From: Mytilus californianus
Lineage: Eukaryota
Direction of reading: 5' to 3'
NCBI RefSeq assembly: GCF_021869535.1
Contig: NW_026262674.1
Coordinates: 1,364,001-1,428,000, forward strand
Length of the DNA: 64,000 nucleotides
Shown in pieces: positions 1,637 through 58,550 of the stretch. Every line of letters starts with the position of its first letter. The first letter of the stretch is position 1. A program made the position numbers and the translations under genes. The notes under the pieces were generated by a model. The model saw only the letters and a program-made list of their open reading frames with translations, was not told where the DNA came from and did no database searches.

Positions 1637-3735
1637 ACATGAACACATGCTGATGACAATTCTTTTACACTTCTGTAATATAAAGTACACATGAACACAT
1701 CCTGATGACAATTCTTTTACACATATGTAATATAATGACAATTCCTTTACACATCTGTAATATAAAGTACACATAAACACTTCCTGGTGACTGTTCTTTT
1801 ATACACCTGGAATATATAGTACACATGAACACATCCTGATGACAATTCTTTTCCAAATCTGTAATATAAACTACACATGAACACATCCTGATGACAATTC
1901 TTTTCCACATCTGTAATATCAAGTACACATGAACACATCCTGATGATAATTCTTTTACACATCTGTAATATAAAGTACACACGAACACATCCTGATGACA
2001 ATTCTTTTACACATCTGTAATATAAAGTACACATGAATACATCCTGATGACAATTGTTTTACACATCTGGAATATAAAGTACACATGAACACTTCCTGAT
2101 GACAATTCTTTTACACATCTGGAATATAAAGTACACATGAACAGCCTGATGACAATTCTTTTACACATCTGTAATATAAAGTACACATGAACACATCCTG
2201 ATGACAATTCTTTTACACACCTGGAATATAAAGTACACATGAACACATCCTGATGACGATTCTTTTACACATCTGTAATATAAGGTACACATGAACACAC
2301 CCTGATGATAATTCTTTTACACATCTGGAATATAAAGTACACTTGAACACATCCTGATGACAATTCTTTTACACATCTGGAATATAAAGTACACATGAAC
2401 ACACCCTGATGATAATTCTTTTACACATCTGGAATAAAAAGTACACATGAACACTTCCTGATGACAATTCTTTTACACATCTGGAATATAAAGTACACAT
2501 GAACACAGCCTGATGACAATTCTTTTACACATCTGTAATATAAAGTACACATGAACACATCCTGATGACAATTCTTTTACACATCTGGAATATAAAGTAA
2601 ACACGAACACAGCCTGATGACAATTCTTTTACACATCTGGAATATAAAGTACACATGAACACATCCTGATGACAATTCTTTTACACATCTGGAATATAAA
2701 AATCACATGAACACAGCCTGATGACAATTCTTTTACACATCTGTAATATAAAGTACACATGAACACACCCTGATGATAATTCTTAAACACATCTGGAATA
2801 TAAGTACACATGAACACACCCTGATGATAATTCTTTTACACATCTGGAATATAAACTACACATGAACACATCCTGATGACAATTCTTTTACACATCTGGA
2901 ATATAAAGTACACATGAACACATCCTGATGACAATTCTTTTACACATCTGTAATATAAAGTACACATGAATACTTCCTGATGACAATTCTTTTACACATC
3001 TGTAATATAAAATACACATGAACACATCCTGATGACAATTCTTTTACACATCTGTAATATAAAGTACACGTGAACAAAGCCTGATGACAATTCTTTTACG
3101 CATCTGTAACATAAAGTACACATGAACACTTCCTGATGACAATTCTTTTTCACATCTGGAATATAAAGTACATATGAACACATCCTGATGACAATTCTTT
3201 TACACATCTGTAATATAAAGTGCACATGAACACATCCTGATGACAATTCTTTTACACATCTGTAATATAAAGTACACATGAACACACCCTGATGACAATT
3301 CTTTTACACATCTGTAATATAAAGTACACATGAACACACCCTGATGTTAATTCTTTTACACATCTGGAATATAAAGTACACATGAACACATCCTGATGAC
3401 AATTCTTTTACACATCGGTAATATAAAGTACACATGAACACATCCTGATGACAATTCTTATACACATCTGTAATATAAAGTACACATGAACACACCCTGA
3501 TGACAATTGTTTTACACATCTGGAATATAAAGTACACATGAACACATCCTGATGACAATTCTTTTACACATCTGTAATATAAAGTACACATGAACACATC
3601 CTGATGACAATTCTTTTACACATCTGTAATATAAAGTACACATGAACACATCCTGATGACAAATCTTTTACACATCTGGAATATAAAGTACACATGAACA
3701 CATCATGATGCCAATTCTTTTACACATCTGGAATT
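1637..3735 (+). repeat. 52-bp tandem minisatellite, about 40 copies, probably ZF-derived
   Basis: Unit acacatctgtaatataaagtacacatgaacacatcctgatgacaattctttt; ORF-track repeats are offset by 312 = 6x52. Confidence 0.95.
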
Positions 3736-3829
3736 TATACATTTAGCTTTATTAGTTACAGATTATGTATGGATTTGGAAAATTGAGTATGCTACTTTGC
3801 TAAAATCTCATCGAAACGGTCAGTGGCAG

Positions 3830-4810
3830 TCAGAAATTACATAGACATGCCAGTCAGAACTTACTGCGAAAGTGAACACATATAAAAGTGGTGTAAGTGT
3901 GTAATGTTCCAATACCAGTCAGAACTTACAGGGACAAGTGAACACACATAAAATCAGTGGATAACAGACAGAACTCTTGAGATTGATTGATTGATTGTTG
4001 GTTTCTAAACGTCCAGTGGCACATATTTCATGTATCTTTAGGACGGGAAGTTAAAAATGTGAACACATATGAATATGGTGTAGGTGTTCAATTGGTCACT
4101 GACCGTTACAACTTACACAGACATGTGAACACTCGGAACTTACAGACATGAGAACAGTCAAAACCTACTGGCATGTAGAACTCATAGAGAAACATGAGAA
4201 TAGTCAAAACCTACTGGCAGGTAGAAGTCGTAGAGAGACATGTGGACACATTCTGGTGATAAACATAGTTAACGAGGTGTAAGCTTAAGTGGTCAATGTT
4301 TTACTGACAGCTCGAACTTACAGAAAGACATGTTTGTGATAAACCTGATGAATGTGGTGTAAGTGTTCAATATTTTACTGACAACCAGAGAACTCACAGT
4401 GTAAACACATGTTGGTGATAAACCTGATGAATGTGGTCTAAGTGTTCAATGTTTTACTGACAACCAGAGAACTCACAGTGTGAACACATGTTGGTGATAA
4501 ACCTGATGAATGTGGTGTAAGTGTTCGATGTTTTACTGACACCAGAACTCACAGTGTGAACACATGTTGGTGATAAACCTGATAAATGTGGTGTTAGTGT
4601 TCAATTTATTACTGACAACCAGAACTCAAAGTGTGAACACATGTGATAAACCTGATGAATGTGGTGTATGTGTTTAATGATTTGCTGACAACCAGAACTC
4701 ACAAAGTGAACATATGTTGGTGATAAACCTGATGAATGTGGTGTAAGTGTGTAATGTTTTACTGAAACCTAGAACTTACAGAGATCTGTGAACACATCCT
4801 GTAGATTAAA
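3830..4810 (+). repeat. Degenerate ZF-derived repeats (27-bp type, then ~78-bp type)
   Basis: Recurring tggtgataaacctgatgaatgtggtgtaagtgttcaatgttttactgaca..agaactcaca; resumes at 5250-5530; paralogous to 19790-20360 and 57090-57460. Confidence 0.75.
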
Positions 4811-5247
4811 CTACCTAGACATCATTGACATGGGAACCATCTCTTTAGGCCCCGCTGTGAATAACGTGTGGTAAAAATTTGTATCTTTACCATAGGACAT
4901 GGGGTTTTCAACTAAAAACAAATCTTTTGACCTTGACCTTTGACATAGGAAGTTGTACATATATTATGACACACCCTCTGGTGTTGGTTAATATGCATGT
5001 CAAGTATAAACTTTAAAATCATAACGGTTCTCAAGATATAGAGCGGACACGATCTTTACCATAGGACATGGGGTTGTCAACTGAAACCAAAGTTTTTGAC
5101 CTTGACCTTCGACCTAGGAATTTGTACTAACATTATGACACACCCTCTGGTGTTGGTTAATATACATGTCAAGTATAAAGTATGAAACTATAACGGACGG
5201 ACAGACTGATCACTATAGGGCGACCGCCATTCGGCGGGGCCCTAATT
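4810..5247 (-). mobile_element. HINE/pearl-like element, family B
   Basis: Two ~170-bp internal repeats, an acggacggacagac microsatellite and terminal hairpin ccgcc-attc-ggcgg; truncated paralogue at 56860-57088. Confidence 0.6.
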
Positions 5248-5639
5248 ATTATGGTATAAGTGTTCAATGTTTTACTGACAGCTAGAACTCAAAGTGTGAA
5301 CACATACTTGTCACAAATCTAATGAATGTGGTGTAAGTGTTCAATGTTTTACTGACGACTAGTCTAAGAACTTACAGAGATCTGTGAACACATTCTGGTG
5401 ATAAACTAATTAAGTGCTCCTTGTTTTACTGACAGCTCGAACTCACAGAGAGAACTGTTAACACATACTGGTTATAAACCTAATTACTAGTAATGTGGTG
5501 TAAGTGTTAATGTTTTACTGACAGCTAAAACTTACAGAGACCCTCAAAATGTAAAACAACGCAAACACCGACATCTAGAATGTGTTTTTGTTAAACTCTG
5601 AACGTTCAGTTCTCGAATGAATAAACAAAAAATACAAAC

Positions 5640-7260
5640 GAGAACACACACTTGAGATAAACTGCATAACTGTGATGTGTTTGGGAAATGATTAAGTCGG
5701 CATGATGATGGTTTACAGAGACATACGAGAACACATACATGTAATTAACCTCATGACCGTGATGTATGGTGTAAAAGGTTTTGTCAGCATGGTAATTTAC
5801 ATAGACTCATGTGAACTTATACTGGTGATAAACCTCTTGGTCGTGATGTGTGGTGTTTAGTCAGCTTGGTAAATTACAGAGACAAATAAGAATACATATA
5901 GGTGATAAGCTGCATAACTGTGATGTATGCTGTAAAAGGGTTTACTGAACATGGGAATTTTACAGAGACACATAGTGTTTCCCCTAACACACAAAAAGGG
6001 CATGGTAACTTAATTGAAAAAGGGCATCTAGAGGGCGCAAACATTTATAAAAAGGGCACCTATAGTGTATGGAAAATTAGCAAAAAGGCACCTACAGTAT
6101 GCTACAGAAAACAAAAAAGTAACAGGTAACCAGTTCAATAATTACTATATGGAACATTAGTCTAATTTAAACCTTATTTAGAAATTATTGTACATGTTCT
6201 TGATGTTGGTTGGGAGTTATTTAGTCTCATTTAAATTGTTTAGAAAAAGTGTTTTTTTAAGTGCACACTAAAGTGCTCCTATATAAGTAAGGAGTTTTAT
6301 AAATATAACAGGTGGAACAGGGGTGATATATTGATGCAATACTACATTGCATACATTGAAGAAGGTATTAACAGTTTCTTTTTTTTCTCCATAATTGTTA
6401 GAAATAAAGCATTTGTTAAGTGCTCCTATATAAGAAGGAGGATTATCAATACAAGAAGTAAAACAGGAAGTGGTGCTGTACATAAACAAATGGATAACAT
6501 GTGGACATTTTCATTCTGTATTAAATATCTAGTATTTGTTTAATTATCTTAAATCCCCTAATTAGCAGTAAACAATCATTAACAGAGGTGATAAAACTGC
6601 CAAAGGCAAGGTATTTAACTTTATCCCATGGTCAGTTAATTAGAGAGTTACACAATTAGGTAACAAGTTTACCGGAATTGCCGATGCATGGAATTTTGAA
6701 ATTTTGTTTTTTTGAAAAAGGCTTCTTTTAGGGCATTTTCGAGACAATGGCGTCATTCAAAGAAGTGAAAAAAGGGCATGGCGTCATTTATAAAGACAAA
6801 AAAGGGCATATGGCGTCACTTAAAAATGGCATGGCGTCTATCCATGCCGCAAACATGCTTGGGGAAAACACTAGACACATGAGAACACATACTGGTGATA
6901 AACATTATAAATTTTATTTATATTGTTGAAGATTCAGTTACTGTAAGAGTTATAATCAACATAGATCGATGCAAACACATACTGGTGATAAATTATCATT
7001 AATCTTTTTATGTGCTAAATAATTTTATTGGAAGAAGCGACTTATACAGAGAACACAATGACATATACTTGTGATAAACATAAAAAAATATGACGCAATG
7101 TATTATTTATTTGCTTTAAATTTGTTTTTAGAAGAAATGCCTTGAACAGACACATTTGAACAAATACAAGAACTCATCATAAAACCTTATAAAAATAATT
7201 TAGTGACCAGGGTCCAAAAACCATGAAAATAATGAAACTTAACAGACATTGGAGAACATG
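5640..7260 (+). pseudogene. Decayed C2H2 zinc-finger array interrupted by a TIR element
   Basis: 84-bp periodic remnants of CxxC, HxxxH and TGDKP codons with stops and indels; colinear with 57545-58330. Confidence 0.7.
5974..6872. mobile_element. 899-bp non-autonomous TIR element (hAT-like)
   Basis: Termini agtgtttcccc / ggggaaaacact; agacacat duplicated at 5966-5973 and 6873-6880; empty site at 57977-57984; subterminal aaaaagggca repeats. Confidence 0.85.
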
Positions 7261-7269
7261 TTATGGTGA

Positions 7270-7520
7270 TAAAACCTCATACATGTGAAGTATGGGCTAA
7301 AACCTCTTACATGTGATGTATGGGCTAAAACCTCATACATGTGAAGTATGGGCTAAAACCTCATACATGTGATGTATGGGCTAAAACCTAATACATGTGA
7401 AGTATAGGCTAAACATATTACAGTGATAGAACATCATACATGTCGCAGTGAAGTATGGTCTAAACCCTCATACATGTGAAGTATGGGATAAAACCTCATA
7501 CATGGGAAGTATAGGTTAAA
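7270..7520 (+). repeat. 28-bp minisatellite derived from the KPHTCEVCG part of a finger
   Basis: Unit aaaacctcatacatgtgaagtatgggct; paralogue at 58345-58550. Confidence 0.85.
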
Positions 7521-8245
7521 ACTAGTGGTAAGTTAATTATAATTGGTATGCAGTTGTATAAGCATTGGCATATCTCATTTCCATGGAAATTTTTTGGCCC
7601 TGCCACCTCAGTCATTGTCTATTGACTTTGAATTTTTTGCTTAGTTTTCATGTATTAGTTTGTGATTATTTCAGTTTATGGGGAACCACTAGTGGTAAGT
7701 TAATGATAATTGGTGATAATTGGTATGCAGTTGGATAAGCATTGGCATATCTCATTTCTATGGAGATTTGTTGCCCCCCCCCCCCCCCCCCTCAGTCATG
7801 GTCTATTGATTTTGAAACTTTTTCTTAGTTTTCATGTATTAGTTTGTGATTAGGTTGGTTCATGGATAACCACTAGTAGTAGGTCAATGATATTTGGTAT
7901 GCAGTTGAATAAGCATTGGCATATCTCATAACCATGGAGATTATTTGACCACGCCCCCTCAGTTATGGTTTATTGACTTTGAAATTTTGCTTAGTTTACA
8001 TCATGTATTAGTTTGTGTTTAGGCCTGTTTAAAGGGAACTCTTTATGATAAGTCAATGGTAATTGTTATACAGTTGTATTAGCATTGGCACATCTCATTT
8101 CTATGGAGTTTGTTTAGCCATGTACTTTCAGTCATGGTTCATTGACTTTGAATATTTTCAAAGCTTACATGTTAAAGTGTTGCTATTTTAATTTCAACAT
8201 TTGCATTATCGAAATTACAAAAAAGCGAGACATATCTCTGTGATA
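7520..8245 (+). mobile_element. 5'-truncated interspersed repeat with ~185-bp internal repeats (HINE-like)
   Basis: Three to four copies of attggtatgcagttgtataagcattggcatatctcattt; ends aaaagcgagacatatctctgtgataacagttt; absent from the paralogous segment. Confidence 0.5.
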
Positions 8246-13000: not shown

Positions 13001-14125
13001 ATGAATGTGGAAGAGGATCTAGTCACAATCAATGGTACTCTACACAGACATGTGGGAACAGAGGCTGTAGTCACAATCAATGGTACTCTACACAGACATG
13101 TGAGAACAGAGGCTGTAGTCACAATCAATGGTACTCTACACAGACATCTGGGAACAGAGGCTGGTAATAAACTGCATGAATGGGATGTTTGTGCTAGAAA
13201 AAATAGTCCCGGTAGAGACTTAAAGAGACACATGAGAAGGGAAACTGCTGAAAAACATCACAAATGTGATATGTGTGAGAGAGAATTTTCTAGAGAAAGT
13301 AACCTATTAAAGATACACATGAAAACACATACAGGTGATAAACCTCATAACTGTAGTGAATTTGGTAAGGAGTTTAGTCATCTTGGTAATTTACGGGGTC
13401 ACACGAGAACACATTCAAACGAAAAAACTCATGTCTGTGATGTATGTGGTAAAGGGTTTCGTCATCTTGGTAGTTTACAGATTCACATGAGAACGCATAC
13501 AGGGGATAAACATGATAAACCTCATGACTGTGATGTATGTGGTAAAGGGTTTAGTCAGCATGGTAGTTTACAGATTCACATGAGAACACATACAGGGGAT
13601 AAACCTTATGACTGTGGTTTATGTGGTAAAGGGTTTAGTCAGCTTGGTCATTTACAGAGACACATGAGAACACATACAGGGGAGAAACCTTATGCCTGTG
13701 ATGTATGTGGCAAAGGTTTTAGTCTTCTTAATAATTTACAGATTCACATGGGAACACATACAGGGGATAAACCTCATAACTGTGATGTATGTGGTAAAGG
13801 GTTTAGTCAGCTTGGTGATTTACAGAGACACATAAGAACACATATAGGTGATAAACCTCATAACTGTGATGTATGTGGTAAAAGGTTCAGCCTGCTTGGA
13901 AATTTACAAAGACACATGAGAATACATACCGGCGATAAACCTCATGACTGTGATGTATGTGGTAAAGAGTTCAGTCGACTTGGTGATTTACAGAGACACT
14001 TGAGAATACATACAGGTTATAAACCTCATGAATGTGATGTTTGTGGGAAAGGGTTTAGTGATCTTAGTAATTTCAAGAGACATATGAAAACACATACAGG
14101 CAAAACATGTAAACCTCACATTTGA
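13001..14125 (+). CDS. C2H2 zinc-finger protein 1 (ZF exon): 8 canonical, 1 atypical and 2 degenerate fingers
   Basis: CxxC-x12-HxxxH repeats with TGDKP/TGEKP linkers; pyrimidine tract and ttacag acceptor ending at 12981; frame is open from the acceptor. Confidence 0.85.
   Translation: MNVEEDLVTINGTLHRHVGTEAVVTINGTLHRHVRTEAVVTINGTLHRHLGTEAGNKLHEWDVCARKNSPGRDLKRHMRRETAEKHHKCDMCEREFSRESNLLKIHMKTHTGDKPHNCSEFGKEFSHLGNLRGHTRTHSNEKTHVCDVCGKGFRHLGSLQIHMRTHTGDKHDKPHDCDVCGKGFSQHGSLQIHMRTHTGDKPYDCGLCGKGFSQLGHLQRHMRTHTGEKPYACDVCGKGFSLLNNLQIHMGTHTGDKPHNCDVCGKGFSQLGDLQRHIRTHIGDKPHNCDVCGKRFSLLGNLQRHMRIHTGDKPHDCDVCGKEFSRLGDLQRHLRIHTGYKPHECDVCGKGFSDLSNFKRHMKTHTGKTCKPHI
13019..13165 (+). repeat. In-frame 48-bp (16-aa) triplication in ZF1 N-terminus
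   Basis: VTINGTLHRH(V/L)(G/R)TEA occurs three times; ZF2 and ZF3 have one copy. Confidence 0.9.
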
Positions 14126-14174
14126 AATGTTTGTGACTAAGGGTTTAATCAATTGAATAGTTTAAAGGGAAGTA

Positions 14175-14480
14175 TGCAATTAACCTCATGACTGTGATGT
14201 ACAATGTATATGGTACAGAGTTTGGTCAGCATTGTAATTTACATATTGACATGAGAACACATACATGTTATTAACTTCATGACTGTGGTGTATATGGTAC
14301 AGAGTTTGGTCAGCATTGTAATTTACATATTGACATGAGAACACATACATGTTATTAACTTCATGACTGTGGTGTATATGGTACAGAGTTTGGTCAGCAT
14401 TGTAATTTACATATTGACATGAGAACACATACATGTTATTAACTTCATGACTGTGGTGTATGTGGTAAAGGGTTTAGCTA
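14175..14480 (+). repeat. 84-bp tandem repeat of a dead finger, about 3.5 copies
   Basis: Near-identical units, each with TAA in the linker, Cys to Tyr and His to Asp. Confidence 0.85.
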
Positions 14481-14659
14481 GCTTAGTAAGCATGCTAACA
14501 CATGAGAACACATGATTGTGATGTATGTTGCATATGGTTTAGTCATATATTCATGATCTTAGTAATTTAAGGAGACATATGAACATGATGAAAATACATA
14601 CAAGCAAAGCATATAAATTTCACATTTGTAATGTATGTGGTAAAGGATTTAACTAGCTT

Positions 14660-14830
14660 AAATAATAATAAAATTGAGAATGGAAATGGGGAATGTGTCA
14701 AAGAGACAACAACCCGACCACAGAACAGACAACAGCAGAAGGCCACCAACAGGTCTTCAATGCAGCGAGAAATTCCCGCACCCGGAGGCGTCCTTCAGCT
14801 GGCCCCTAAACAAATATATATACTAGTATT
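14660..14830. mobile_element. Short SINE-like interspersed repeat
   Basis: aataaaattgagaatggaaatggggaatgtgtcaaagagacaacaacccgacca; second copy at about 18545-18715 and a stub near 62500. Confidence 0.6.
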
Positions 14831-14903
14831 TCAAAGAAACACATGAGAACACATAAAGGCGATAAAAATCATCACTGGTGAAGTATGTGGTAAACAGTGA
14901 TAA

Positions 14904-15809
14904 AGGTTTCATTTTACTCAATGTGATTTACAGAGACACACAAGAACACATACAGGTTATAGATCTCATGACTGTAATGTATGTGGGAAAGAGTTCAGTC
15001 TACTTTGTGATTTACAGAGACACACGAGAACACATACAGGTTATAGACCTATTGACTGTAATGTATGTGGGAAAGAGTTCAGTCTACTTTGTGATTTACA
15101 GAGACACACTAGAACACATACAGGTTATAGACCTATTGACTGTGATGTATGTGGGAAAGAGTTCAGTCTACTTTGTGATTTACAGAGACACACTAGAACA
15201 CATACAGGTTATAGACCTATTGACTGTGATGTATGTGGGAAAGAGTTCAGTCTACTTTGTGATTTACAGAGACACACGAGAACACTTACAGGTTATAGAC
15301 CTCATTACTGTGCTGTATGTGGGAAAGAGTTCATTCTACTTTGTGATTTACAGAGACACACGAGAACACATACAGGTTATAGACCTATTGACTGTGATGT
15401 ATGTGGGAAAGAGTTCAGTCTACTTTGTGATTTACAGAGACACACGAGAACACATACAGGTTATAGACCTATTGACTGTGATGTATGTGGGAAAGAGTTC
15501 AGTCTACTTTGTGATTTACAGAGACACACGAGAACACTTACAGGTTATAGACCTCATTACTGTGCTGTATGTGGGAAAGAGTTCAGTCTACTTTGTGATT
15601 TACAGAGACACACGAGAACACATACAGGTTATAAACCTCAGGACTGTGATGTATGTGGGAATGGGTTTAGTCATCTTATTGATTTAAGGAGGCATATGAA
15701 AATACATACAGACAAAACATGCAAACCTCACATTCATGACATATGTCAATTTGTGTTGTACCAAACAAATGTATGCAAATACATAACATACAGGCAAATT
15801 ACCTTATGA
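14904..15809 (+). pseudogene. Cryptic ATG-less open frame with 9 near-identical C2H2 fingers (7 intact)
   Basis: Frame offset -1 from the listed 14878 ORF reads (CDVCGKEFSLLCDLQRHTRTHTGYRPID)n; stop-free from 14904 to TGA at 15807-15809. Confidence 0.8.
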
Positions 15810-16189
15810 CTGTAATGTATGTGGTACAGGGTTTTGTTGGCATTGTAATTTACATATTGACATGAAAACATATTAATTTGATGACTGTTGTGTATATGGT
15901 AAAGGGTTTAGCTAGCTTAGAAATGTAAAGAGACACATGAGAACACATACAGGTGATTAATCTCTTGACTGTATCATGTGTATGTGGTAAAGCTTTTAAT
16001 CAGCATGTTGACTCAATGAAACACATTGGAATACATAATGGGGATAAAACTCTGAAATGAGATGTTTGAGGTTTCGGGTTTAATATGAGTGATAATCTAC
16101 ATTCTAAAACACGTACTACATTTGTACTAGTAAATATATAATAACATGGATAATTTACAAAGATAATGAGAACGCATGCTAATGATAAT

Positions 16190-16630
16190 TTATAGACACG
16201 TGAGAACTCAAACTAGTGATTGTTTACATAGACATTTGAGAACACATACCAGTGACAATTTACATAGACACATGAGAACACATACTAGTCTAGTGATGAT
16301 TTACGTAAACACACATGAGAACCCATACTTGTGATAAGGGATAATTTACATAAACACATGAGAACACATACTAGTAATGATTTACGTAAACACACATGAG
16401 AACCCATACTAGTGATAACGGATAATTTATAAGACACATGAGAACACATACTAGAAAATAAGTGATAATTTACGTAGACGTATGAGAAATCATATTAGTG
16501 ATAACTTACATAGACATATGAGAACACATTTATTAGTGATAATTTACACTGAGAACACATACTAGTGATAATTTACATAGACACAAGAGAACACATACTA
16601 GTGATAATTTACATAGACACATGAGAACAC
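16190..16630 (+). repeat. 36-40-bp minisatellite from the finger helix and linker
   Basis: Unit actagtgataatttacatagacacatgagaacacat. Confidence 0.8.
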
Positions 16631-16999
16631 ATATCAGCATGATTAGTAAATAATGGATAAATGTCATTCATCTAGAATAATAGAATACTTGACTGTAAAT
16701 AATCTATGTGTAAATATCTGTTTTTGATTGTATTGTGATGTGTGTGTGGTCTCACTGAAGATAAGTTTTTTTGTAACTAACTATAATTGTTAACCCTCTT
16801 TAAATAAAGAATTAATACTAATATTATTATGATAATTATTATTATGATTGTATGAGAGTTCATCCAGGTATTTTACTATGTTATAAATAGCATTAATTGA
16901 TTGATGGATTTTAAGCATTTTTCGTCACTTTCACGACCCCAGCGTGTCTGGTAAAACAGCCGTTGGACGTCAGAGTAATCTCGGACTAATCATAACGAA

Positions 17000-18779: not shown

Positions 18780-19660
18780 ACACATATGAATGTGTTGTAA
18801 ATGTTTATTTTGTAAATGACAGTTAACGCTTACAGACATACGAACACATATAAATGTGGTCAATTGGTAAATGGCAATCAGAGATTACCCAGACATGAGA
18901 ACAGTCAGAACTTACATAGACATGGGAACAGTCATAGCGTACAGAGATATGAAAGCAGTTAGAACTTAGACATGAGAACAGTCAGAGCTTACATAGACAT
19001 GAGAACCGTCAGAACTTATAGACATGAGAACCGTCAGAGCTTACACAGACATGAGGACCGTCAGAACTTACATAGACATGAGAACAGTCAGAGCTTACAG
19101 AGACATGAAAACAGTCAGAACGTATAGACATGAGAACCGTCAGAGCTTACACATACATGAGGACCGTCAGAGCTTACACAGACATGAGAACAGTCAGAAC
19201 TTACATAGACATGAGAACAGTCAGAACTTACATAGACTGGGAAAATCAGAGCGTACTGAGACATGAAAACAGTTAGAACTTAGACATAAGAACAGTCAGA
19301 GCTTACAAAGACATGAGAACAGTCAGAACTTACATAGACATGAGAACAGTCAGAACTTACATAGACATGGGAAAATCAGAGCGTACTGAGACATGAAAAC
19401 AGTTAGAACTTAGACATAAGAACAGTCAAAGCTTACAAAGACATGAGAACAGTCAGAACTTATAGACATGAGAACAGTCAGAGCTTATAAACATGAGAAC
19501 CGTCAGAGCTTACACAGACAAGAGAACAGTCAGAACTTACATAGACATGAGAATTGTCAGAACTTACAGAGACATGAAAACAGTCAGAACTTATAGACAT
19601 AGGAACAGTTAGAGCTTACACAGACATGAAAACAGTCAGAACGTATAGACATGAGTCAGA
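18780..19660 (+). repeat. 27-bp minisatellite, about 30 copies, ZF-helix derived
   Basis: Unit gacatgagaacagtcagaacttacata; 9-aa periodicity in the ORF track. Confidence 0.9.
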
Positions 19661-19789
19661 ACTTACACAGCTTTGTAAACACGCACTGGTAGAAACCTTA
19701 ATAATCTAGTGTAAGCGTTCTTTGATCATGGCTCATCGACTGCCGAGACATAAAAATTAATGATTGTATAATATATATCTGCTGACAGC

Positions 19790-20360
19790 CAGTTCTTACA
19801 TGTACAGAGACATGTGGACACAAAATGGTGATAAACCTAATTAATGTGGTGTAAGTGTTCAATGTTTTACTGACAGCCAGAACTTACAGAGAGACATGTG
19901 GACATATGCTGGTGATAAACCTAACCAATGTGCAGTAAGGGTTCAATGTATTATTGACAGCTTAAACCCACAGAGAGACATATAGACACATACTGGTTAT
20001 AAACATAATTAATGTGGTGTAAGTGTTCAATGTTTTACTGAGAGCCAGAACTCACAGAGAGATGTGTACATATACTGGTGATAAACCTAATAAATGTGAT
20101 ACTAGTGTTCAATGCTTTACTGAGAGCCAGAACTAACAGAGAGACATGTATAAACATACTGGTGATAAACATATTTAATGTCGTACGTGCTCATTTTTTC
20201 ACTTACAGCCCGAACTCACAGAGAGACATGTAAATTACACATTACTGGTGATAAATTAATGTGGTGTTGGTGTTCGATGTTGCCTGACAGTCAGCTAGAA
20301 CTAACCAGAGAGACGTACGTGTGGCTACATGCTGGTGGTAAACCGTTACCAAATTAATGT
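19790..20360 (+). repeat. ~78-bp degenerate ZF-derived repeats
   Basis: ctggtgataaacctaattaatgtggtgtaagtgttcaatgttttactgacagccagaacttacagagagacatgtggacaca units. Confidence 0.8.
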
Positions 20361-21650
20361 GTTGTTAGTGTTCAAAGGTTTTTTTTAATTTTTCTCAAAA
20401 ATCTATATGAATTACCACTTGACGTCAATTCGTTGTTTACAATTAAGTAGAACACATATAATTGAAAAAAAATGAAAAAAAAACCCTAAATCTTCGTGTT
20501 AACCAGAGACCTGAGCTATCTATATTTAATTATCTAATTGAACATTTTTACTGAACATAAGATTATTTTCCTCATTTTGTGTGGTTATAGATGGTTGCAT
20601 TGTAAAGTAAATAAACATTATCTCCGTTTTTTAGGCTCTCATGCATATTTTTCTTTAGAAGACAAAGCATTGTCTTTCAATGTTGTCATAATTTCATGTA
20701 GATGCTTGACCTCTTTATAAATATGCTTGGGTCTTGAAGTTGACAAATTTTGGTAACTTATCGACTTGTAGGAGTCAATATTTGCAACTTTTTAATTCAG
20801 GTCAAATATTTCTTGCTTTACACTAATTGACTTATTGAAGTCATAATTTGTCTTAAATTAAAGGGAGACAAATCTTGAAACCTACAAATTTAGACCTCTA
20901 TGAGTCAAAAGCAGATTTAGACTTATTTACATGTTTGTCTGAGCTCTGACTGACTAGTCCAACACCCCATTAGTTTCAACATCATTTGGTCCGACACCCC
21001 ATTGATGTATTTACATTTGTATGCTAATTTATCCACCGTTACGTAAAGTCACACAGGTTCCCGTAAACTTTGACATCACAATAAAAAAAATTGCTGTCAC
21101 AATTAAATAGTGATTGCTGCTCATGCTGCTTGACATGCTTGATGTCAGAAGGTTATTCTGAGCAGATTTAAGGTCATTCGGAGCTAAATTCAGCTAATTA
21201 CCAAAAGTGTAAATACGTATATTTGTCCGACAGCCCAGTAGTCCAACACCCCAATAGTCTGACAATGAAAGGTGCATTACTGCTGTTATAGAAAATCAAT
21301 TCATAGAATCGTTGTTGGTGTGGTATTTGAACAACTCTTTCTTATATAAGTATGTCAAAGAAACCAAAACAGAGGATACCATACCACCCAATCTAATCAA
21401 ATTCATATTTATATTAACTCTGGTGATCTCATACATGATGGTGTTTTTATGGGAAAATGCACTACTCTTAAAAGAAAATGCAAAGAATATTCCCCAGTAG
21501 TGCAGTCTGTCATCTTTCACGTAATTTAGTCTCGGAAATTGTCATTACTAAAAAAGAATCATTTTACCCTGCAAACATGGCAAAGGGAATATTTTATACC
21601 AAGAATGATTTTCATCTACACCATGTACACTGTACATGCAAGTACATGAA

Positions 21651-24349: not shown

Positions 24350-24871
24350 ATGTATGAGGTAGAAGATTTTGTCACAATCAATGGCACACAACAGAGACAC
24401 ATAAGAACACAGACTGGTACACTTCATAAATGTGGTGTTTGTGGTAGAGAATTTAGTAGATGTAATGACTTGAAGAGACATGTGAGAACACATACTGGCG
24501 AAAAACCTCATGACTGTGATGTTTGTGGTAAAGGGTTTAGTCAGTCTGGTAGTTTACAAAGTCATATGAGAATACATACAGGTGAAAAACCTCATGACTG
24601 TGAAGTATGTGGTAAGCGGTTTAGTCGGCTCTTTATATTACAAATGCACATGAGAACACATATAGGAGATAAACCTTATGAATGTGATACATGTGGTAAA
24701 AGGTTTAGTCAGCATTGTCATTTAAATACACACATGAGAATACATACAGGAGATGAACCTCATAACTGTGATGTATGTGATAAAGTGTTTAGTCGGCTTG
24801 GACATCTACAAAGACACATGAAAACATATACAGGAGATAAACCTTATGAGATGTCTGTGATCAAAATTTAA
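24350..24871 (+). CDS. C2H2 zinc-finger protein 2 (4 canonical fingers plus 1 His-to-Tyr), truncated
   Basis: Canonical fingers and linkers; ttacag acceptor ending at 24315; broken finger remnants continue to about 25140. Confidence 0.7.
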   Translation: MYEVEDFVTINGTQQRHIRTQTGTLHKCGVCGREFSRCNDLKRHVRTHTGEKPHDCDVCGKGFSQSGSLQSHMRIHTGEKPHDCEVCGKRFSRLFILQMHMRTHIGDKPYECDTCGKRFSQHCHLNTHMRIHTGDEPHNCDVCDKVFSRLGHLQRHMKTYTGDKPYEMSVIKI

Positions 24872-25684: not shown

Positions 25685-25717
<33 letters not shown>

Positions 25718-44688: not shown

Positions 44689-44894
44689 TATATATATACT
44701 TCTTGTACATGTTGTATTATTAAATATATAGTATGGGATTAGAATTACCCAAACATACAGATGCATAAATGCAGAGAATGTCTAAATTGCAGAAAGGTAT
44801 CAAAAGGTTTATATGTCTTTATTTTTTTTGTGTTCCTTACAGAGTCGTTCAAGAACGCACATACTGGTCAGTGGAGATAAACATTATCAATAAG

Positions 44895-46073
44895 ATGTTA
44901 GAGGGAGGAGAGGATTTAGTCACACTCAACGGTACTCTACAGAGACACATAAACATACAGGCTGGTACAACACATCATAAATGTGATGTCTGTGCTAGAG
45001 AATTTAGTCAAAGAGGTCACTTAAAGAGACACTTGAAAACACATACTGGTGAAAAACCTCATGAGTGTGATGTTTGTTTTAGAAAATTTTCTCGCAGTGA
45101 TGACTTAAAGAGACATACGAGAACACATACTGGTGAAAAGCCTCATAAATGTGATGTTTGTGCTAGTGAATTTTCTCAAGGTAGTCAACTAAAAGCACAC
45201 ATGAGTACACATACTGGAGATAAACTTCATGGCTGTGATTTATGTGGTAAAGGGTTTAGTTATCTTAGTAGTTTACAGAGTCACATGAGAATACATACAG
45301 GCGTTAAACCCCATGAGTGTGATGTATGTAGTCAACGGTTTAGTCGGCGTTGGAATTTACAGATACACATGAGAACACATACAGGTGATAAACCTCATAA
45401 CTGTGATGTTTGTGATAAACGCTTTAGTCAGCATGGTTCTTTACGGATTCACATGAGAACACATACAGGGAATAAACCTTATGACTGTGGTGTATGTGGT
45501 ACAGGGTTTAGTCGGCATTGGAATTTACAGACTCACATGAGAACACATACAGGAGATAAACCTTATGACTGTGATGTATGTGGTAAAGGGTTTAGTGAGC
45601 AAGGTAGTTTACAGAGACACATGAGAATACATACAGGGGATGAATATGATAAACCTCATGACTGTGATTTATGTGGTAAAGGGTTTAGTCAGCTTGGTAG
45701 TTTACAGATTCACATGAGAACACATACAGGTGATAAACCATATGACTGTGATGTATGTGGTAAAAGGTTTAGTGAGCAGGGTAATTTACAGACTCACATG
45801 AGAACACATACAGGTGATAAACTGTATGACTGTGGTGAATGTGGTAAGGGGTTTAGTCATATTAGGAATTTACGGGATCACATGAGAATACATACAGGTG
45901 ATAAACCTTATATATGTGATGTATGTTGTAAAGGGTTTAGTCAGCATAGTAATTTACAGACTCACATGAGAACACACACAGGTGATAAACTGTATGACTG
46001 TGGTGAATGTGGTAAGGGGTTTCGTCGTATTAGTAATTTATGGGATCACATGAGAACACATACAGGTGATTAA
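44895..46073 (+). CDS. C2H2 zinc-finger protein 3 (13 fingers)
   Basis: 13 canonical fingers; ttacag acceptor ending at 44842, so the listed ORF start at 44769 is probably intronic; ATG at 44895 aligns with the ZF1 and ZF2 Met. Confidence 0.85.
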   Translation: MLEGGEDLVTLNGTLQRHINIQAGTTHHKCDVCAREFSQRGHLKRHLKTHTGEKPHECDVCFRKFSRSDDLKRHTRTHTGEKPHKCDVCASEFSQGSQLKAHMSTHTGDKLHGCDLCGKGFSYLSSLQSHMRIHTGVKPHECDVCSQRFSRRWNLQIHMRTHTGDKPHNCDVCDKRFSQHGSLRIHMRTHTGNKPYDCGVCGTGFSRHWNLQTHMRTHTGDKPYDCDVCGKGFSEQGSLQRHMRIHTGDEYDKPHDCDLCGKGFSQLGSLQIHMRTHTGDKPYDCDVCGKRFSEQGNLQTHMRTHTGDKLYDCGECGKGFSHIRNLRDHMRIHTGDKPYICDVCCKGFSQHSNLQTHMRTHTGDKLYDCGECGKGFRRISNLWDHMRTHTGD

Positions 46074-46730
46074 CCTTATATATGTGATTTATGTTGTAAA
46101 TGGTTTATTCAGCATAGTAATTTGCAGATTCACATGAGAACACACACAGGTGATAAACCTCATAACTGTGATGCATGTGGTAAAGATTTTAGATTGCTTG
46201 GTCATTTAAGAAGACACATGAGAACACATACCGGTGACAAACCTCATGACTGTGATGTATGTGGTAAACGGTTTAGTCAATATGGTAATTTAAAGAGACA
46301 CATGAATACACATACAGGGGATAAACCTATCGACTGTGATGTATGTGGTAAAGGGTTTAGTCTGCATGCTTCTTTACAGAGACACATGAAAATACATGCA
46401 TAGTAGTTTACAGATTCACATAAGAATAGATACAGGTGATAAACCTCATGACTGAGATGTATGTGGTAAACGGTTTACTAAGCTTGTTAGTTTACAAATT
46501 CACATGAGAACACATACAGGTGATAAACCACATGACTGTGATGTGTGTGGTAAAGGGTTTCGTCATCTTGGTAGTTTACAGAGTCATATGAGAACACATA
46601 CAGGCGATAAACCTCATTACTGTGATGTATGTGGTATATGGTTTAGTCAGCTTGGTAATTTACAGAAACACATGAGAACACATACAGATGATAAGCTGCA
46701 TGATTGTCGTGTTCGCGGTAATGTCAGTTA
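46074..46730 (+). pseudogene. ZF3 continuation: 4 intact in-frame fingers after a linker TAA, then a frameshifted tail
   Basis: 46122 is in frame with 44895; after the stop at 46401-46403 the finger frame shifts and contains a further TGA. Confidence 0.8.
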
Positions 46731-47539
46731 AAGAATAAACATGGTAAAGGGATCAAGTCAAGTTTGTAATTTACATCATCAGGGGTACTATTTTAACAAG
46801 TAATTTCATTATCACCTATTCCAGTGATTTTTTAAAAATAGGTATCACCTATTTAAGTGATTTTGGTGTTTCCTTTGATCTTTAAAAGCTAATTTTATTG
46901 ATTTTTCATATTTTGATAAACTTTTCTATTATTTTCCTTCTTAAATCAATTGCGCTAAAGCTTTTAAAAGTACCCTTGGGAATTTTTCTGTAATCAAATA
47001 TTCATTAACTACTCTAACTATCAGACAAAGGTCAACAATATTAGGTAACCTGATTGGTTTTTTAGAGTTTAAATGATCTACTTTAAGGTTATGTCCTGAT
47101 CTATAAATTATTCCAGTTTTTGCATGTTTTAAATAAACTGTAAAAACTGACAGGCTTATCAAGCAAAAGACAATTTCTGCATGTACATAGTTGTTTTTTC
47201 AATGGAATACATATCTTTTTACCAATAAAAAAATCAAACTTGTGGGAAAATCATCAAGAAAATGTTAAAAACACTTATTGAAGTGATTACATTTAAACTT
47301 CTCAAATTACTTGTTTCAGTGATTTTAAAAAGTCTGTGTCTATTTTTCTGAAATTTTTTAGTATTTCACAGCCAAAATTCACTCAAAGAAGTGATTTTGA
47401 AATCACTTGTTTAAGTAGTATGGTAACCCCTGACTGTCTCTACATAGAAATGTGAAAATTTGTATATATTATTTACCTGATGCATTATAATTCTTTGATT
47501 GTGGATCATTTCCAGCCCAAGTTGTGTCATGTAGTTGAT

Positions 47540-47765
47540 TAATAATACATATGGGAGAAGATTAATAATACATATGGGAGAAGATTAATAATACATATGG
47601 TAGAAGACTTTATAAGTTGGCAATCTGATTAATAATACATATGGGAGAAGATTATATAAGTTGGCAATCTGATTAATAATACATATGGGAGAAGACTTTA
47701 TAAGTTGGCAATCTGATTAATAATACATATGGGAGAAGACTTTATAAGTTGGCAATCTGATTAAA
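47540..47765 (+). repeat. 23/44-bp tandem repeat
   Basis: attaataatacatatgggagaag, with or without actttataagttggcaatctg. Confidence 0.8.
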
Positions 47766-55949: not shown

Positions 55950-56735
55950 ACATTCTGACAATCAGAACTAACACAGACATGAGAACAACCAGAACTAACA
56001 GAGACACGAGAACAATCAGAACTAACACAGGCATGAGAACAACCAGAACTAACAGAGAAACGAGAACAATCAGAACTAACACAGGCATGAGAACAATTAG
56101 AACTAACAGAGACACGAGAACAATCAGAACTAACACAGGCATGAGAACAACCAGAACTAACAGAGACACGAGAACAATCAGAACTAACACAGGCATGAGA
56201 ACAACCAGAACTAACAGAGACACGAGAACAATCAGAACTAACACAGGCATGAGAACAACCAGAACTAACAGAGACACGAGAACATACAGAACTAACAGAG
56301 ACACGAGAACAATCAAAACTAACAGAGACACGAGAACAATCAGAACTAACACAGACATGAGAACAATCAGAACTAACAGAGACACGAGAACAAACAAAAC
56401 TTACACAGACATGAAAACAATCAGAAAAAACACAGACAAGAGAACAATCAGAACTAACAGAGACACGAGAACAATCAGAACTAACAGAGACACGAGAACA
56501 GTCAGAACTTACACAGACACGAGAACAATCAGAACTAACAGAGACACGAGAACAATCAGAACTAACATAGACACGAGAACAGTCAGAACTTACACAGACA
56601 TAAGAACAATCAGAACTAACAGAGACACGAGAACAATCAGAACTTACACAGACATGAGAACAATCAGAACTAATAGAGACACGAGAACAATCAGAACTAA
56701 GAGACACGAGAACAGTCAGAACTTAAAGACTTGAA
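55950..56735 (+). repeat. 27-bp minisatellite, about 29 copies
   Basis: Unit gacacgagaacaatcagaactaacaga, alternating with ggcatgagaacaacc variants; explains ORFs 55783, 55865 and 55928. Confidence 0.95.
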
Positions 56736-57089
56736 AGCACATATTGATGGGAGGTCCGAATGAAGCCAGTTTAAGCAACTTTAGGTCACCGTATGGCCCA
56801 ACAATGACCAAAACCCATTAACCATATCATATAATGCGACATAAAAGACCCGGACACGATCTTTACCATAGAACATGGGATTGTTAACTGAAACCAAAGG
56901 TTTTGACCTTGACCTACGACCTAGGAATTTGTACTAACATCATGACACACCCTCTGGTGTTGGTTAATATACATGTCAAGTATAAAGTATGAAATTATAA
57001 CGGTTCTCTAGATATAGAGCGGACACAGTTTGTAACGGACGGACAGACTGATCACTATAGGGCGATCGCCACTCGGCGGGGCCCTAATT

Positions 57090-58330
57090 GATACGGTATA
57101 AGTGTTCTATGTTTTACTGACAGCTAGAACTCAAAGCGTGAACACATACTTATGATAAACCTAATTAATGTGGTGTAAGTGTTCAATGTTTTACTGGCGA
57201 CTAGTCTAAGAACTTACAGAGATCTGTGAACACATTCTGGTGATAAACCTAATTAAGTGCTCCTTGTTTTACTAACAGCTCGAACTCACAGAGAGAACTG
57301 TTAACACTTACTGGTTATAAACCTAATTAATGTGATGTAAGTGCTCCATGTTTTACTGACAGCTAAATCTTACAGAGAGACATGTGGACACATGCTTGTA
57401 ACAACCTAATTAATGTGGTGTAAGTGTTAATGTTTTACTGACAGCTAGAACTTACAGAGACCCCGACCCTCAAAATATAAAACAACGCAAACACCGACAT
57501 CTAGAATGTGTCTTTGTTAAACTCTGAACGTTCAGTTCTCGAATGAATAAACTAAACAATCATACACATGAGAACACACACTTGAGATAAACTGCATAAC
57601 TGTGAGGTGTGTGGGAAATGATTAAGTCGGCATGATGGTTTACAGAGACACACGAGAACACATACATGTAATTAACCTCATGACCGTGATGTATGGTGTA
57701 AAAGGTTTTGCCAGCATGGTAATTTACATAGACTCATGTGAACACATACTGGTGATAAACCTCTTGACCGTGATGTGTGGTGTTTAGTGAGCTTGGTAAT
57801 TCACATGGACAAATGAGAATACATACACATGAGAAGCTGTATGACTGTGATGTATGTTGTAAAGGATTTAGTCAGCTTGGTAATTTACAGAGACAAATGA
57901 GGATACATATAGGTGATAAGCTGCATAACTGTGATGTATGTTGTAAAGGGTTTAGTGAACATGGGAAAATTTACAGAGACACATGAGAACACATACCGGT
58001 GATACACATTATAAATTTTATTTATTTTATTGAAGATTCAGTAAGAGTAATAATCAACATAGATCGATGCGAACACATACTGGTCATAAATTATCATTAA
58101 TCTTTTTATGTGCTAAATAATTTTATTGGAAGAAGCGACTTACAGAGAACACAATGACATACTTGTGATAAACATAAAAATATGACGCAATGTATTATTT
58201 ATTTGCTTTTTCGAAATGCCTTGAATATACTCTTTAAAACTCATACAGGATTTCATCATAAAACCTTATAAATCTAATTTAGTGACCAGGGTCCAAAATT
58301 AATGAAACTTAACAGACATTGGAGAACATG
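57090..58330 (+). pseudogene. ~78-bp repeats followed by a decayed C2H2 array
   Basis: CDVCCKGFSQLGNLQRQMRIH-type broken fingers; colinear with 5270-7260. Confidence 0.75.
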
Positions 58331-58344
58331 TTGCGGTGATAAAA

Positions 58345-58550
58345 TCTCATACATGTGATAGTATATAAGCTAAAACCTCATACATGTGAAGTATGTGCAA
58401 AAACCTCATACATGTGAAGTATGTGCAAAAACCTCATACATGTGAAGTATGGGCTAAAACCTTATACATGTGAAGTATGGGCTAAAACCTCATACATGTG
58501 AAGTATGGGCTAAACATATTACACTGATAAAACCTCATACATATGTAGCA
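58345..58550 (+). repeat. 28-bp ZF-derived minisatellite
   Basis: aaaacctcatacatgtgaagtatg(t/g)gc units. Confidence 0.85.

What the first reader, a model, noticed from the sequence alone, without database searches (positions are those of the whole stretch)
1637..58550. Zinc-finger coding unit as a seed for many minisatellite families
Seen: independent arrays with periods of 52, 27, 28, 36-40, ~78, 48 and 84 bp each copy a different slice of the 84-bp finger, in the same + orientation as the genes. Most contain the HMRTH core acacatgagaacacat. Inference: the ZF cluster continually converts its own coding DNA into satellites. If transcribed, these could yield small RNAs or decoys matching the whole paralogue family.
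Basis: partly seen in the sequence, partly recalled or inferred. Interest (0 to 1): 0.7.

Follow-up and report, generated by a model that had tools for sequence, protein, structure and literature searches.

The report
Decayed zinc-finger arrays turned minisatellites
In a mollusc-like zinc-finger gene cluster, finger-coding repeats left beyond the stop codon or in dead gene copies have lost part of their 84-bp unit and been re-amplified locally into shorter tandem arrays; this looks like an ordinary by-product of repeat instability, with no sign so far of a function.

Summary
TRF finds every array named. All finger-like DNA is on the + strand (102 of 103 HMM hits).

How well each unit traces to the finger:
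- Robust under dinucleotide-preserving shuffles: the degenerate 79/84-bp units, the 36-43-bp unit (finger positions 37-74) and the 28-bp unit (73-84 plus 1-18).
- Probable (p about 0.002-0.02, plus a 46-bp intermediate, adjacency and strand): the 25/27-bp family and the 52-bp unit.
- Not significant at DNA level: the in-frame 48-bp repeat.
- Not finger-derived: the 44-bp array.
- The 16-nt core survives only in the 36-43-bp array among the short families.

The arrays are not independent: 13 arrays collapse to about 6 families shared by paralogous blocks.

Genome-wide, the short units give 2-24 candidate sites, almost all in finger clusters and in the fingers' orientation (15 of 16). A dispersed repeat used as control gives 1,556.

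Best reading: fingers released from selection decay, lose part of the unit, and are re-amplified in place. Segmental duplication then copies them.

RNA depth is near zero, so the small-RNA or decoy idea has no support. No small-RNA library was tested. Precedents exist in mouse (MMSAT4) and human (ZNF252 3'UTR fingers). I found no description of sub-finger periods. The scan holds no earlier report of this on other DNA.

The parts
1637..3737 (+). 52-bp minisatellite (about 38 copies, 92% matches), maps to finger positions 22-74; unique to this locus in the genome
   Evidence: a single-copy homologue with a collinear right flank sits in paralogue L021
3820..4132 (+). run of decayed fingers with internal deletions of varying size, leading into the 25/46-bp array
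   Evidence: sequence read directly; nhmmer hits at 3882-3950 and 4066-4132
4117..4242 (+). 25-bp and 46-bp units; the 46-bp unit links the 25/27-bp family to the degenerate 84-bp unit
   Evidence: (46-bp vs degenerate-84: 0/2000 shuffles)
4286..4781 (+). 79-bp degenerate finger array (the finger unit minus 5 bp), non-coding
   Evidence: (z about 30)
5241..5973 (+). decayed 84-bp finger array, paralogue of 57160-57898 (82% identity)
6873..7079 (+). decayed fingers upstream of the 28-bp array
7262..7522 (+). 28-bp minisatellite, finger positions 73-84 plus 1-18 (linker and Cys knuckle); the first unit is preceded in register by the second half of a decayed finger
13001..14125 (+). open C2H2 finger ORF B (374 aa); its N-terminus holds the in-frame 48-bp triplication at 13012-13163
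   Evidence: the 48-bp repeat is not significant at DNA level, though nhmmer gives E=6e-5 at 12982-13060
14127..14659 (+). post-stop tail of frame-broken 84-bp fingers, including three near-identical units
14667..14827 (.). dispersed-repeat insertion inside the decayed finger tract
   Evidence: very high depth in both directions, with loose ends at 14667-14669 and 14827
14904..15790 (+). open finger frame of about 10 fingers with no start codon, homogenised as a 252-bp three-finger repeat (94%); ends with the same KTCKPHI tail as ORF B
15786..16101 (+). post-stop decayed fingers
16152..16634 (+). 36-43-bp minisatellite, finger positions 37-74 (24-74 in the 42-bp variant), at the 3' end of finger tract B; the same arrangement recurs in at least 5 paralogues
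18878..19655 (+). 27-bp minisatellite (29 copies), about finger positions 24-60 with two small deletions
19800..20383 (+). degenerate 84-bp finger array directly downstream of the 27-bp array
   Evidence: (z about 43)
24350..25134 (+). short finger gene C (173-aa ORF) with a decayed finger tail
44769..46073 (+). finger gene D ORF (434 aa, at least 13 fingers)
46074..46703 (+). post-stop fingers of gene D: four still in frame, a frameshift near 46398, then three more
47536..47764 (.). 44-bp array, NOT finger-derived (negative result)
   Evidence: 453/2000 shuffles reach it
55958..56723 (+). 27-bp minisatellite (28 copies, 86%), paralogue of 18878-19655; its long ORFs on both strands are artefacts of a 9-codon period
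   Evidence: no Pfam family
57103..57461 (+). degenerate 84-bp finger array
57562..58249 (+). decayed 84-bp finger array (pseudogene)
58340..58521 (+). 28-bp minisatellite, paralogue of 7262-7522 (92%); finger-like sequence lies on both sides
58530..58740 (+). decayed fingers that continue from the 28-bp array (HMM positions 73-165)

Best explanation
The window is part of a tandemly duplicated C2H2 poly-zinc-finger gene cluster in a 1.65-Gb, 33%-GC genome. That the genome is a mollusc's is an inference.

Each gene's finger exon is an 84-bp coding minisatellite. When a stop codon truncates the array, or a whole copy dies, the fingers downstream are no longer under selection. They remain a highly recombinogenic tandem repeat.

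They first drift as frame-broken 84-bp units. Out-of-register slippage or unequal exchange then creates a unit that lacks one contiguous piece: 84 to 79, 52, 36-43, 28 or 27 bp. That truncated unit is amplified in place by the same slippage and unequal-exchange process.

The arrays therefore stay in cis, in gene orientation, inside or at the 3' end of decayed finger tracts. Segmental duplication of the cluster unit later copies them.

Shown: the slice mapping, strand, contiguity and register, confinement to finger clusters, paralogy, and the post-stop position. Inferred: the molecular mechanism (slippage or unequal crossing-over) and neutrality.
For: Arrays and units.

Slice mapping and statistics. 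The 36-bp, 28-bp and 79/84-bp units are far above dinucleotide-preserving (36, 28) or mononucleotide (79/84) shuffles, above the reverse strand and above 60 scores from non-finger arrays.

Strand: 102 of 103 finger-HMM hits are on +.

Contiguity and register: the short arrays sit inside tracts 1634-7492, 12982-16634 and 57103-58740. The first 28-bp unit continues a decayed finger in register. A graded series of deleted fingers runs into the 25/27-bp array.

Post-stop position: ORF B, the open frame 14904-15790 and gene D are each followed by frame-broken fingers.

Confinement: first-look candidates number 2 (28-bp), 3 (52-bp), 19 (27-bp) and 24 (36-bp), against 1,556 for a dispersed repeat. 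Of 20 upstream 10-kb stretches, 12 hold at least 6 intact fingers and 17 hold an 84-bp-type finger array, against a baseline of about 3.5% or less (binomial 3e-13). Orientation agrees with nearby fingers in 15 of 16 sites (p=0.0003).

Propagation: paralogous blocks are shown.

Recent private amplification: the 52-bp array is unique, and its unit is single-copy in paralogue L021.
Against: The direct unit-to-finger test is only marginal for the 27-bp family (9-34/2000 affine; 15-80/1000 by PWM) and modest for the 52-bp unit (1/1000; 10/2000). The 48-bp repeat fails it.

The paralogous sites are not independent samples. Several are near-identical duplicates or possible haplotigs.

These clusters also hold many minisatellites with no finger similarity. 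General repeat-proneness of the region is therefore part of the picture.

Neutrality is assumed. The recurrent position of the 36-43-bp array after the finger exon would also fit a conserved role.
Confidence: 0.8

Rival explanations
1. Only the 28-bp, 36-43-bp and 79/84-bp arrays derive from fingers. The 25/27-bp family and the 52-bp array are unrelated A/C-rich minisatellites of a repeat-prone region, and their short matches to the finger are chance or shared composition.
For: Under dinucleotide-preserving shuffles the 27-bp units reach only 15-80/1000 and 9-34/2000. That is similar to the rejected 44-bp unit in the PWM test (21/1000). The single-copy 52-bp homologue in L021 shows no clear finger alignment in its surrounding 400 bp. 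Many arrays in these clusters are not finger-like.
Against: The 46-bp unit overlapping the 25-bp array matches the degenerate 84-bp unit at 0/2000. The 27-bp unit scores 28 against it, where 60 null-array scores reach at most 18. The 25/27-bp arrays lie directly upstream of degenerate 84-bp arrays at most sites where they occur. All weak HMM hits inside the 52-bp array are on + and share HMM coordinates 44-74. A graded deletion series is readable at 3820-4240.
Confidence: 0.15
2. The arrays are cargo of a mobile element, for example a Helitron-like or composite element that captured a finger fragment, and they were spread by transposition.
For: A composite unit recurs at several loci on five contigs: a flank of about 1.1 kb containing a 148-bp array, then the 27-bp array, then the degenerate 84-bp array. 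Bivalve satellites are often TE-borne; this last point is general knowledge and was not tested here.
Against: Only 2-24 candidate sites exist in 1.65 Gb, against 1,556 for a real dispersed repeat. The sites cluster within finger-gene regions and keep the fingers' orientation in 15 of 16 cases. Copies diverge like the neighbouring genes, at 72-87%, as segmental duplication would predict. I did not look for terminal repeats or target-site duplications.
Confidence: 0.04
3. The truncated-unit arrays are kept for a function. Candidates are precursors of small RNAs, transcript decoys matching the paralogue family, or dense DNA platforms for heterochromatin or recombination control at finger-gene 3' ends.
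For: The 36-43-bp array holds a conserved position a few hundred bp after the finger exon in at least 5 paralogues. It carries the most conserved coding core, with 10 matches at up to 3 substitutions. Weak single-direction RNA signal runs from the gene tail to about 16.7 kb.
Against: RNA depth is 0.2-1.5 over the 36-43-bp array, no higher than the gene tail, and 0 over the 27-bp array in the only definite RNA run, of which about 6% was read. The arrays vary widely in period and copy number between paralogues, as neutral minisatellites do. No Rfam family matches. Conserved position follows from inheritance by duplication alone.
Confidence: 0.07

Closest known systems
Mouse 'MMSAT4' satellite, shown to be arrays of C2H2 finger triplets belonging to KZFP genes and related units (PMC5363842)
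   Same: Finger-coding DNA behaves as, and is annotated as, a satellite, concentrated in finger-gene clusters. The window's 252-bp three-finger repeat at 14922-15711 is the same kind of thing.
   Different: MMSAT4 keeps whole fingers (multiples of 84 bp). Here several families have sub-finger periods of 27, 28, 36-43 and 52 bp, made from one slice of the unit, and are non-coding. Sequence relatedness to MMSAT4 was not tested and is not expected, since these are different phyla.
Post-stop finger tails in mammalian KRAB-ZNF genes, e.g. human ZNF252, whose 3'UTR holds eleven complete or degenerate fingers after the stop codon (PMC2865497)
   Same: An in-frame stop truncates the array, and the downstream fingers persist and decay. 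This is seen here after ORF B, after the frame 14904-15790, and after gene D.
   Different: The mammalian descriptions I read stop at degenerate fingers. Here the tails go on to form new shorter-period tandem arrays. Whether the tails lie in the mature 3'UTR here is not shown.
PRDM9-type coding minisatellites: finger arrays evolving by unequal exchange and slippage of 84-bp units (established knowledge, not re-read here)
   Same: The instability mechanism inferred is the same. There is also evidence of recent homogenisation, at 94% in the 252-bp repeat and 93% in L036.
   Different: Those arrays stay in frame under selection. Here out-of-register products survive because the DNA is non-coding.
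Satellites derived from transposable elements (reviews PMC6947457, PMC3389668; titles and abstracts only)
   Same: Tandem arrays are born from a slice of a pre-existing repeated sequence.
   Different: The source here is a host gene's coding repeat, not a mobile element, and the arrays are not dispersed (vs 21).

Membership tests
C2H2 poly-zinc-finger gene cluster | Repeated C-x2-C-x12-H-x3-H motifs joined by TG(E/D)KP-type linkers, with a 28-codon (84-bp) period | tested here: met
   39 motif matches on + in the finger tracts; zf-C2H2 and zf-H2C2_2 at E 1e-29 to 1e-110; 84-bp periodicity
C2H2 poly-zinc-finger gene cluster | Several paralogous genes in tandem in one orientation | tested here: met
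   ORFs B, 14904-15790, C and D are all on +; further fingers lie nearby on the same contig
Minisatellite (tandem array of 10-100-bp units) | Head-to-tail copies of a 10-100-bp unit, several copies | tested here: met
   TRF: periods 25-84, 2.6-38.5 copies, 70-95% matches
Finger-derived satellite (MMSAT4-like) | Unit is recognisably finger-coding sequence, above composition-matched controls | tested here: met
   Met for the 79/84, 36-43 and 28-bp units. Met more weakly for the 25/27/46 and 52-bp units (p 0.002-0.02 plus an intermediate). Not met for the 44-bp unit, and not significant for the 48-bp unit.
Finger-derived satellite (MMSAT4-like) | Unit is one or more whole fingers (a multiple of 84 bp) | tested here: not met
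   Met only by the 252-bp repeat and the 84-bp arrays. The 27, 28, 36-43, 52 and 79-bp families are sub-finger slices.
Transposon-borne satellite | Copies dispersed genome-wide, independent of the source gene family | tested here: not met
   2-24 candidate sites against 1,556 for a dispersed control. 17 of 20 sites lie next to finger arrays.
Transposon-borne satellite | Bounded by element termini and target-site duplications | not tested
   No search for termini was made.
Small-RNA (piRNA/siRNA) source locus | Transcribed, with abundant 21-30-nt reads mapping to the arrays | not testable with these tools
   Only one long-RNA raw-read run could be laid: depth 0-1.5 on the arrays. No small-RNA library was available to lay.
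Post-stop 3'UTR finger tail (ZNF252 type) | Recognisable fingers directly after the stop codon, same strand | tested here: met
Post-stop 3'UTR finger tail (ZNF252 type) | The tail is part of the mature transcript | tested here: inconclusive
   Single-direction depth of 0.1-3.4 from 13.7 to 16.7 kb, too low to define transcript ends

The most novel reading that the evidence does not exclude
The sub-finger arrays, above all the 36-43-bp array that sits after the finger exon in many paralogues and repeats the family's most conserved core, are retained as cis platforms. They might act as dense binding or nucleation sites for heterochromatin or recombination control of the cluster, or as a source of small RNAs matching all paralogues. 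On this reading they are not neutral debris.
Probability: 0.07. Interest if true: 0.65.

Novelty: new variant of a known kind. Interest (0 to 1): 0.3.

Why it matters
It shows step by step how a coding tandem repeat becomes non-coding satellite DNA. The stages are: intact fingers, post-stop frame-broken fingers, units with one internal deletion, then amplified short-period arrays. All stages are preserved side by side in one locus and its paralogues. That makes it a clear worked example of minisatellite birth from a host gene rather than from a transposon.

It also carries practical warnings. Such arrays generate long spurious ORFs; the 27-bp array gives frames of 204-280 aa. They will be mis-annotated either as satellites or as genes.

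It does not change how zinc-finger clusters are understood. The instability of finger arrays, post-stop finger tails and finger 'satellites' are all already described in mammals.

Tried and rejected
I then derived all units inside scripts by running TRF on the window file.

2. Mononucleotide shuffles overstated significance. I replaced them with dinucleotide-preserving shuffles. This demoted the 27, 25/46 and 48-bp units.

3. The PWM aligner's linear gap cost hid the two small deletions in the 27-bp unit, so I repeated the test with affine gaps.

The baseline is therefore the genome-wide candidate count of PF00096 plus a dispersed-repeat control.

5. The 44-bp array at 47536-47764 was tested and rejected as finger-derived.

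6. The long ORFs over the 27-bp array (55783-56734, both strands) were rejected as coding. They have no Pfam family, and a period of 9 codons keeps any stop-free frame open.

7. Rfam at gathering threshold found nothing in the window.

8. Literature searches found no description of sub-finger-period arrays. PMC8210747 was a false lead: it mentions zinc finger only as a control gene.

9. The large protein searches, structure prediction and atlas tools were not used. The proteins are unambiguous C2H2 fingers, and the claim does not rest on them.

Full report
**What the window is.** The window is G000:C94:1364001-1428000 of a 1.65-Gb assembly in 175 contigs, with about 33% GC. It holds:
- C2H2 finger ORFs, all on the + strand: 13001-14125, 24350-24871 and 44769-46073. 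Pfam gives zf-C2H2 and zf-H2C2_2 at E 1e-29 to 1e-110.
- A further open finger frame without a start codon at 14904-15790.
- A BEL/Pao retroelement at about 26.6-36.9 kb (Peptidase_A17 plus RVT).

One RNA run holding part of the locus is labelled 'mollusc metagenome'. That the genome is a mollusc's is an inference.

**Checking the observation.** I built a profile from 25 intact 84-bp fingers of the window and aligned each TRF consensus unit, tandemised, to it.

With mononucleotide shuffles, all named families except the 44-bp one scored z of 4 or more on + and about 0 on -. That control was too lenient. With dinucleotide-preserving shuffles the picture sorts into tiers:

| Unit | Shuffles reaching the observed score | Verdict |
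|---|---|---|
| 36 bp | 0/1000 (PWM), 0/2000 (affine) | robust |
| 28 bp | 0/1000, 2/2000 | robust |
| 79/84 bp degenerate | z 30-56 (mononucleotide shuffles) | robust |
| 52 bp | 1/1000, 10/2000 | modest |
| 25 and 46 bp | 11 and 8/1000; 4 and 5/2000 | probable |
| 27 bp (two arrays) | 80 and 15/1000; 9 and 34/2000 | marginal on its own |
| 48 bp | 11/1000, 233/2000 | not significant |
| 44 bp | 21/1000, 453/2000 | not finger-derived |

The 27-bp family gains support from an intermediate. The 46-bp unit that overlaps the 25-bp array matches the neighbouring degenerate 84-bp unit at 0/2000. The 27-bp unit scores 28 against that unit, where 60 scores from non-finger arrays reach at most 18. The three 25/27-bp arrays are plainly one family.

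**Slices of the finger** (position 1 is the first Cys codon):
- 52-bp unit: positions 22-74.
- 36-bp unit: 37-74, and 24-74 in the 42-bp variant.
- 28-bp unit: 73-84 plus 1-18.
- 27-bp unit: about 24-60, with two small deletions.

**The core claim.** With up to 3 substitutions, the 16-nt core occurs 71 times on + and never on -. Among the short families only the 36-43-bp array has it.

**Contiguity and strand.** A two-finger nucleotide HMM gives 103 hits, 102 of them on +. Even the weak hits are therefore not chance. They form continuous tracts: 1634-7492, 12982-16634, 19800-20383, 24350-25134, 44829-46703 and 57103-58740. Every short-period array lies inside or at the end of such a tract.
- The first 28-bp unit at 7262 is preceded in register by finger positions 39-72.
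- The 28-bp array at 58340 has finger-like sequence on both sides, and the downstream hit starts at the array's own phase.
- Between 3820 and 4240 one can read a series of fingers with internal deletions of varying size that grades into the 25/27-bp unit.

About 13.3 kb (21%) of the window is finger-derived. Only 3.8 kb of it is open finger ORF, and 4.7 kb is sub-finger-period array.

**Independence.** The arrays are not 13 independent events.
- Self-comparison shows 5044-5973 matching 56851-57898 and 6873-7441 matching 57977-58542 at 82-87% identity. It also shows 18872-19670 matching 55949-56739 at 76%.
- The two 28-bp arrays are 92% alike.
- The left flank 1-1140 recurs before the 27-bp array in other blocks.

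This leaves about six families: 52, 25/27/46, 28, 36-43, 79/84 degenerate, and the coding 48-bp repeat.

**Genome-wide distribution.** First-look candidates in the whole assembly:

| Query | Candidates |
|---|---|
| 28-bp array | 2 |
| 52-bp array | 3 |
| 27-bp array | 19 |
| 36-43-bp array | 24 |
| degenerate 84-bp array | 111 |
| dispersed repeat at 60350-61261 (control) | 1,556 on more than 20 contigs |

The hits fall in a few regions: C24 at about 12.6, 13.0-13.2, 20.8-20.9, 21.6-21.7 and 25.9-26.0 Mb; C94 at 1.32-1.43 Mb; C109; C174; C35; and C13.

I fetched 20 stretches of 10 kb upstream of hit sites. Twelve hold at least 6 intact fingers and 17 hold an 84-bp-type finger array. PF00096 has 5,706 first-look candidates in the genome. 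So at most about 3.5% of random 10-kb stretches should hold a finger (binomial 3e-13).

There are three caveats:
- The candidate count is a lower bound.
- The sites are not independent, and some are near-identical duplicates.
- True random loci could not be fetched.

Array orientation agrees with nearby fingers at 15 of 16 sites (p=0.0003).

Paralogous loci carry further finger-derived periods: 34-44, 52, 71, 86 and 90 bp clearly, and 64 and 107 bp only marginally. The order 'finger array, a few hundred bp, 36-44-bp array' recurs in L018, L023/L024, L030, L036 and the window. The same loci also hold many arrays with no finger similarity.

**Where the source DNA sits.**
- ORF B ends at 14125 and is followed by frame-broken fingers, three of them near-identical.
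- The open frame 14904-15790 is homogenised as a 252-bp three-finger repeat at 94%. It ends with the same KTCKPHI tail as ORF B, and is followed by decayed fingers and then the 36-43-bp array.
- Gene D has an in-frame stop at 46071-46073 inside a linker. Four in-frame fingers follow, then a frameshift near 46398, then three more fingers.

The raw material is therefore fingers already outside the reading frame, or whole dead copies (blocks 1.6-7.5 kb and 55.9-58.7 kb), not live coding sequence.

**The 52-bp array.** It is unique in the genome and 92% homogeneous. In paralogue L021 its unit is single-copy, followed by a collinear flank. It looks like a recent, private amplification. Its finger origin is the least secure of the accepted families.

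**Transcription.** Over 13700-19699, the definite RNA raw-read run X21 (about 6% of it read) gives these depths:
- 0.1-0.5 over the tail of ORF B.
- Up to 3.4 over the 252-bp finger repeat.
- 0.2-1.5 over the 36-43-bp array.
- 0 over the 27-bp array.

All this signal has the first mate on -, which would mean + strand RNA in a usual stranded library. The large peaks at 14.5-14.9, 17.1-18.1 and 18.5-18.7 kb are dispersed repeats, with both directions represented, loose ends and very high contig depths. One of them (14667-14827) is inserted in the decayed finger tract.

Contigs of runs from a second coded organism cover parts of the 36-43-bp and 27-bp arrays at 95% or better. Those runs may be DNA. 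No small-RNA library could be examined. Rfam finds nothing at gathering threshold.

**Explanation.** I am about 0.8 confident in the following.
- Finger arrays are coding minisatellites.
- Once fingers fall outside the ORF, out-of-register slippage or unequal exchange can fix a unit lacking one contiguous piece.
- The same process amplifies that unit in place.
- Segmental duplication of the cluster unit then spreads the arrays.

The anatomy is shown. The molecular mechanism and neutrality are inferred. Overlaps of 1-2 nt at slice junctions are compatible with microhomology but carry no weight.

**Comparison with what is known.**
- The mouse 'MMSAT4 satellite' is really triplets of C2H2 fingers in KZFP genes and related units (PMC5363842).
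- Human ZNF252 has eleven complete or degenerate fingers after its stop codon, and truncation by in-frame stops is described as a general feature (PMC2865497).
- In three full-text searches I found no description of sub-finger-period arrays made from slices of the unit. This is limited evidence of novelty.

I file the finding as a new variant of a known kind, of modest interest.

**Limits.**

Noticed in passing
window 26631-29776 and 36336-36937: The BEL/Pao element has three exact tandem copies of a unit of about 1,046 bp on its 5' side. Each copy contains the LTR-like segment of about 600 nt. A single copy sits at the 3' end, 100% identical over 300 nt and 86% over the rest.
   Followed up: partly
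window 14667-14827, 17100-18100, 18551-18640: Dispersed repeats show extreme depth in all four runs, both directions, and loose ends at their borders. One is inserted inside a decayed finger tract. A contig joint links 14709 to 18594, which suggests the same repeat family.
   Followed up: partly
window 60350-61261: A tandem repeat of about 540 nt, flagged by another first-stage note as a hammerhead or retrozyme candidate, has 1,556 first-look candidates genome-wide, often in long tandem runs (for example C165 at 24.40 Mb). Rfam at gathering threshold reports no hammerhead in the window.
   Followed up: partly
window 55783-56734, both strands: The 27-bp array (9 codons) produces mechanical ORFs of 204-280 aa in several frames on both strands, with no Pfam family. 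This is an annotation trap.
   Followed up: yes
window 638-991, 4883-5196, 7521-8158: Arrays of 148 bp and 169 bp (two different 169-bp units), not finger-like, recur as parts of the duplicated cluster unit. Examples: 1-1140 matches L022 at 87%, and 7537-8200 matches L022 at 80%.
   Followed up: partly
L036 6431-9209 (G000:C24:21630431-21633209): A paralogue carries a 33-copy 84-bp finger array at 93% identity, with 24 intact finger motifs in 10 kb. It is a very recently homogenised or expanded array, followed by 44-bp and 36-bp arrays.
   Followed up: no
C24:21.70 Mb, C24:25.99 Mb and C109:1.16 Mb: Three loci give identical or near-identical scores and spacings in every search. They are either very recent large segmental duplications or redundant (haplotig-type) assembly of one region.
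   Followed up: no
window 25687-25726, 49194-49218, 50018-50043: Long homopolymer runs: 40 G, 25 T and 26 C.
   Followed up: no
window 1091-1582 (-): A 163-aa ORF with a Cys-rich C-terminal motif lies between the conserved cluster flank and the 52-bp array. It looks like a retroelement fragment by eye, but has no Pfam hit.
   Followed up: partly
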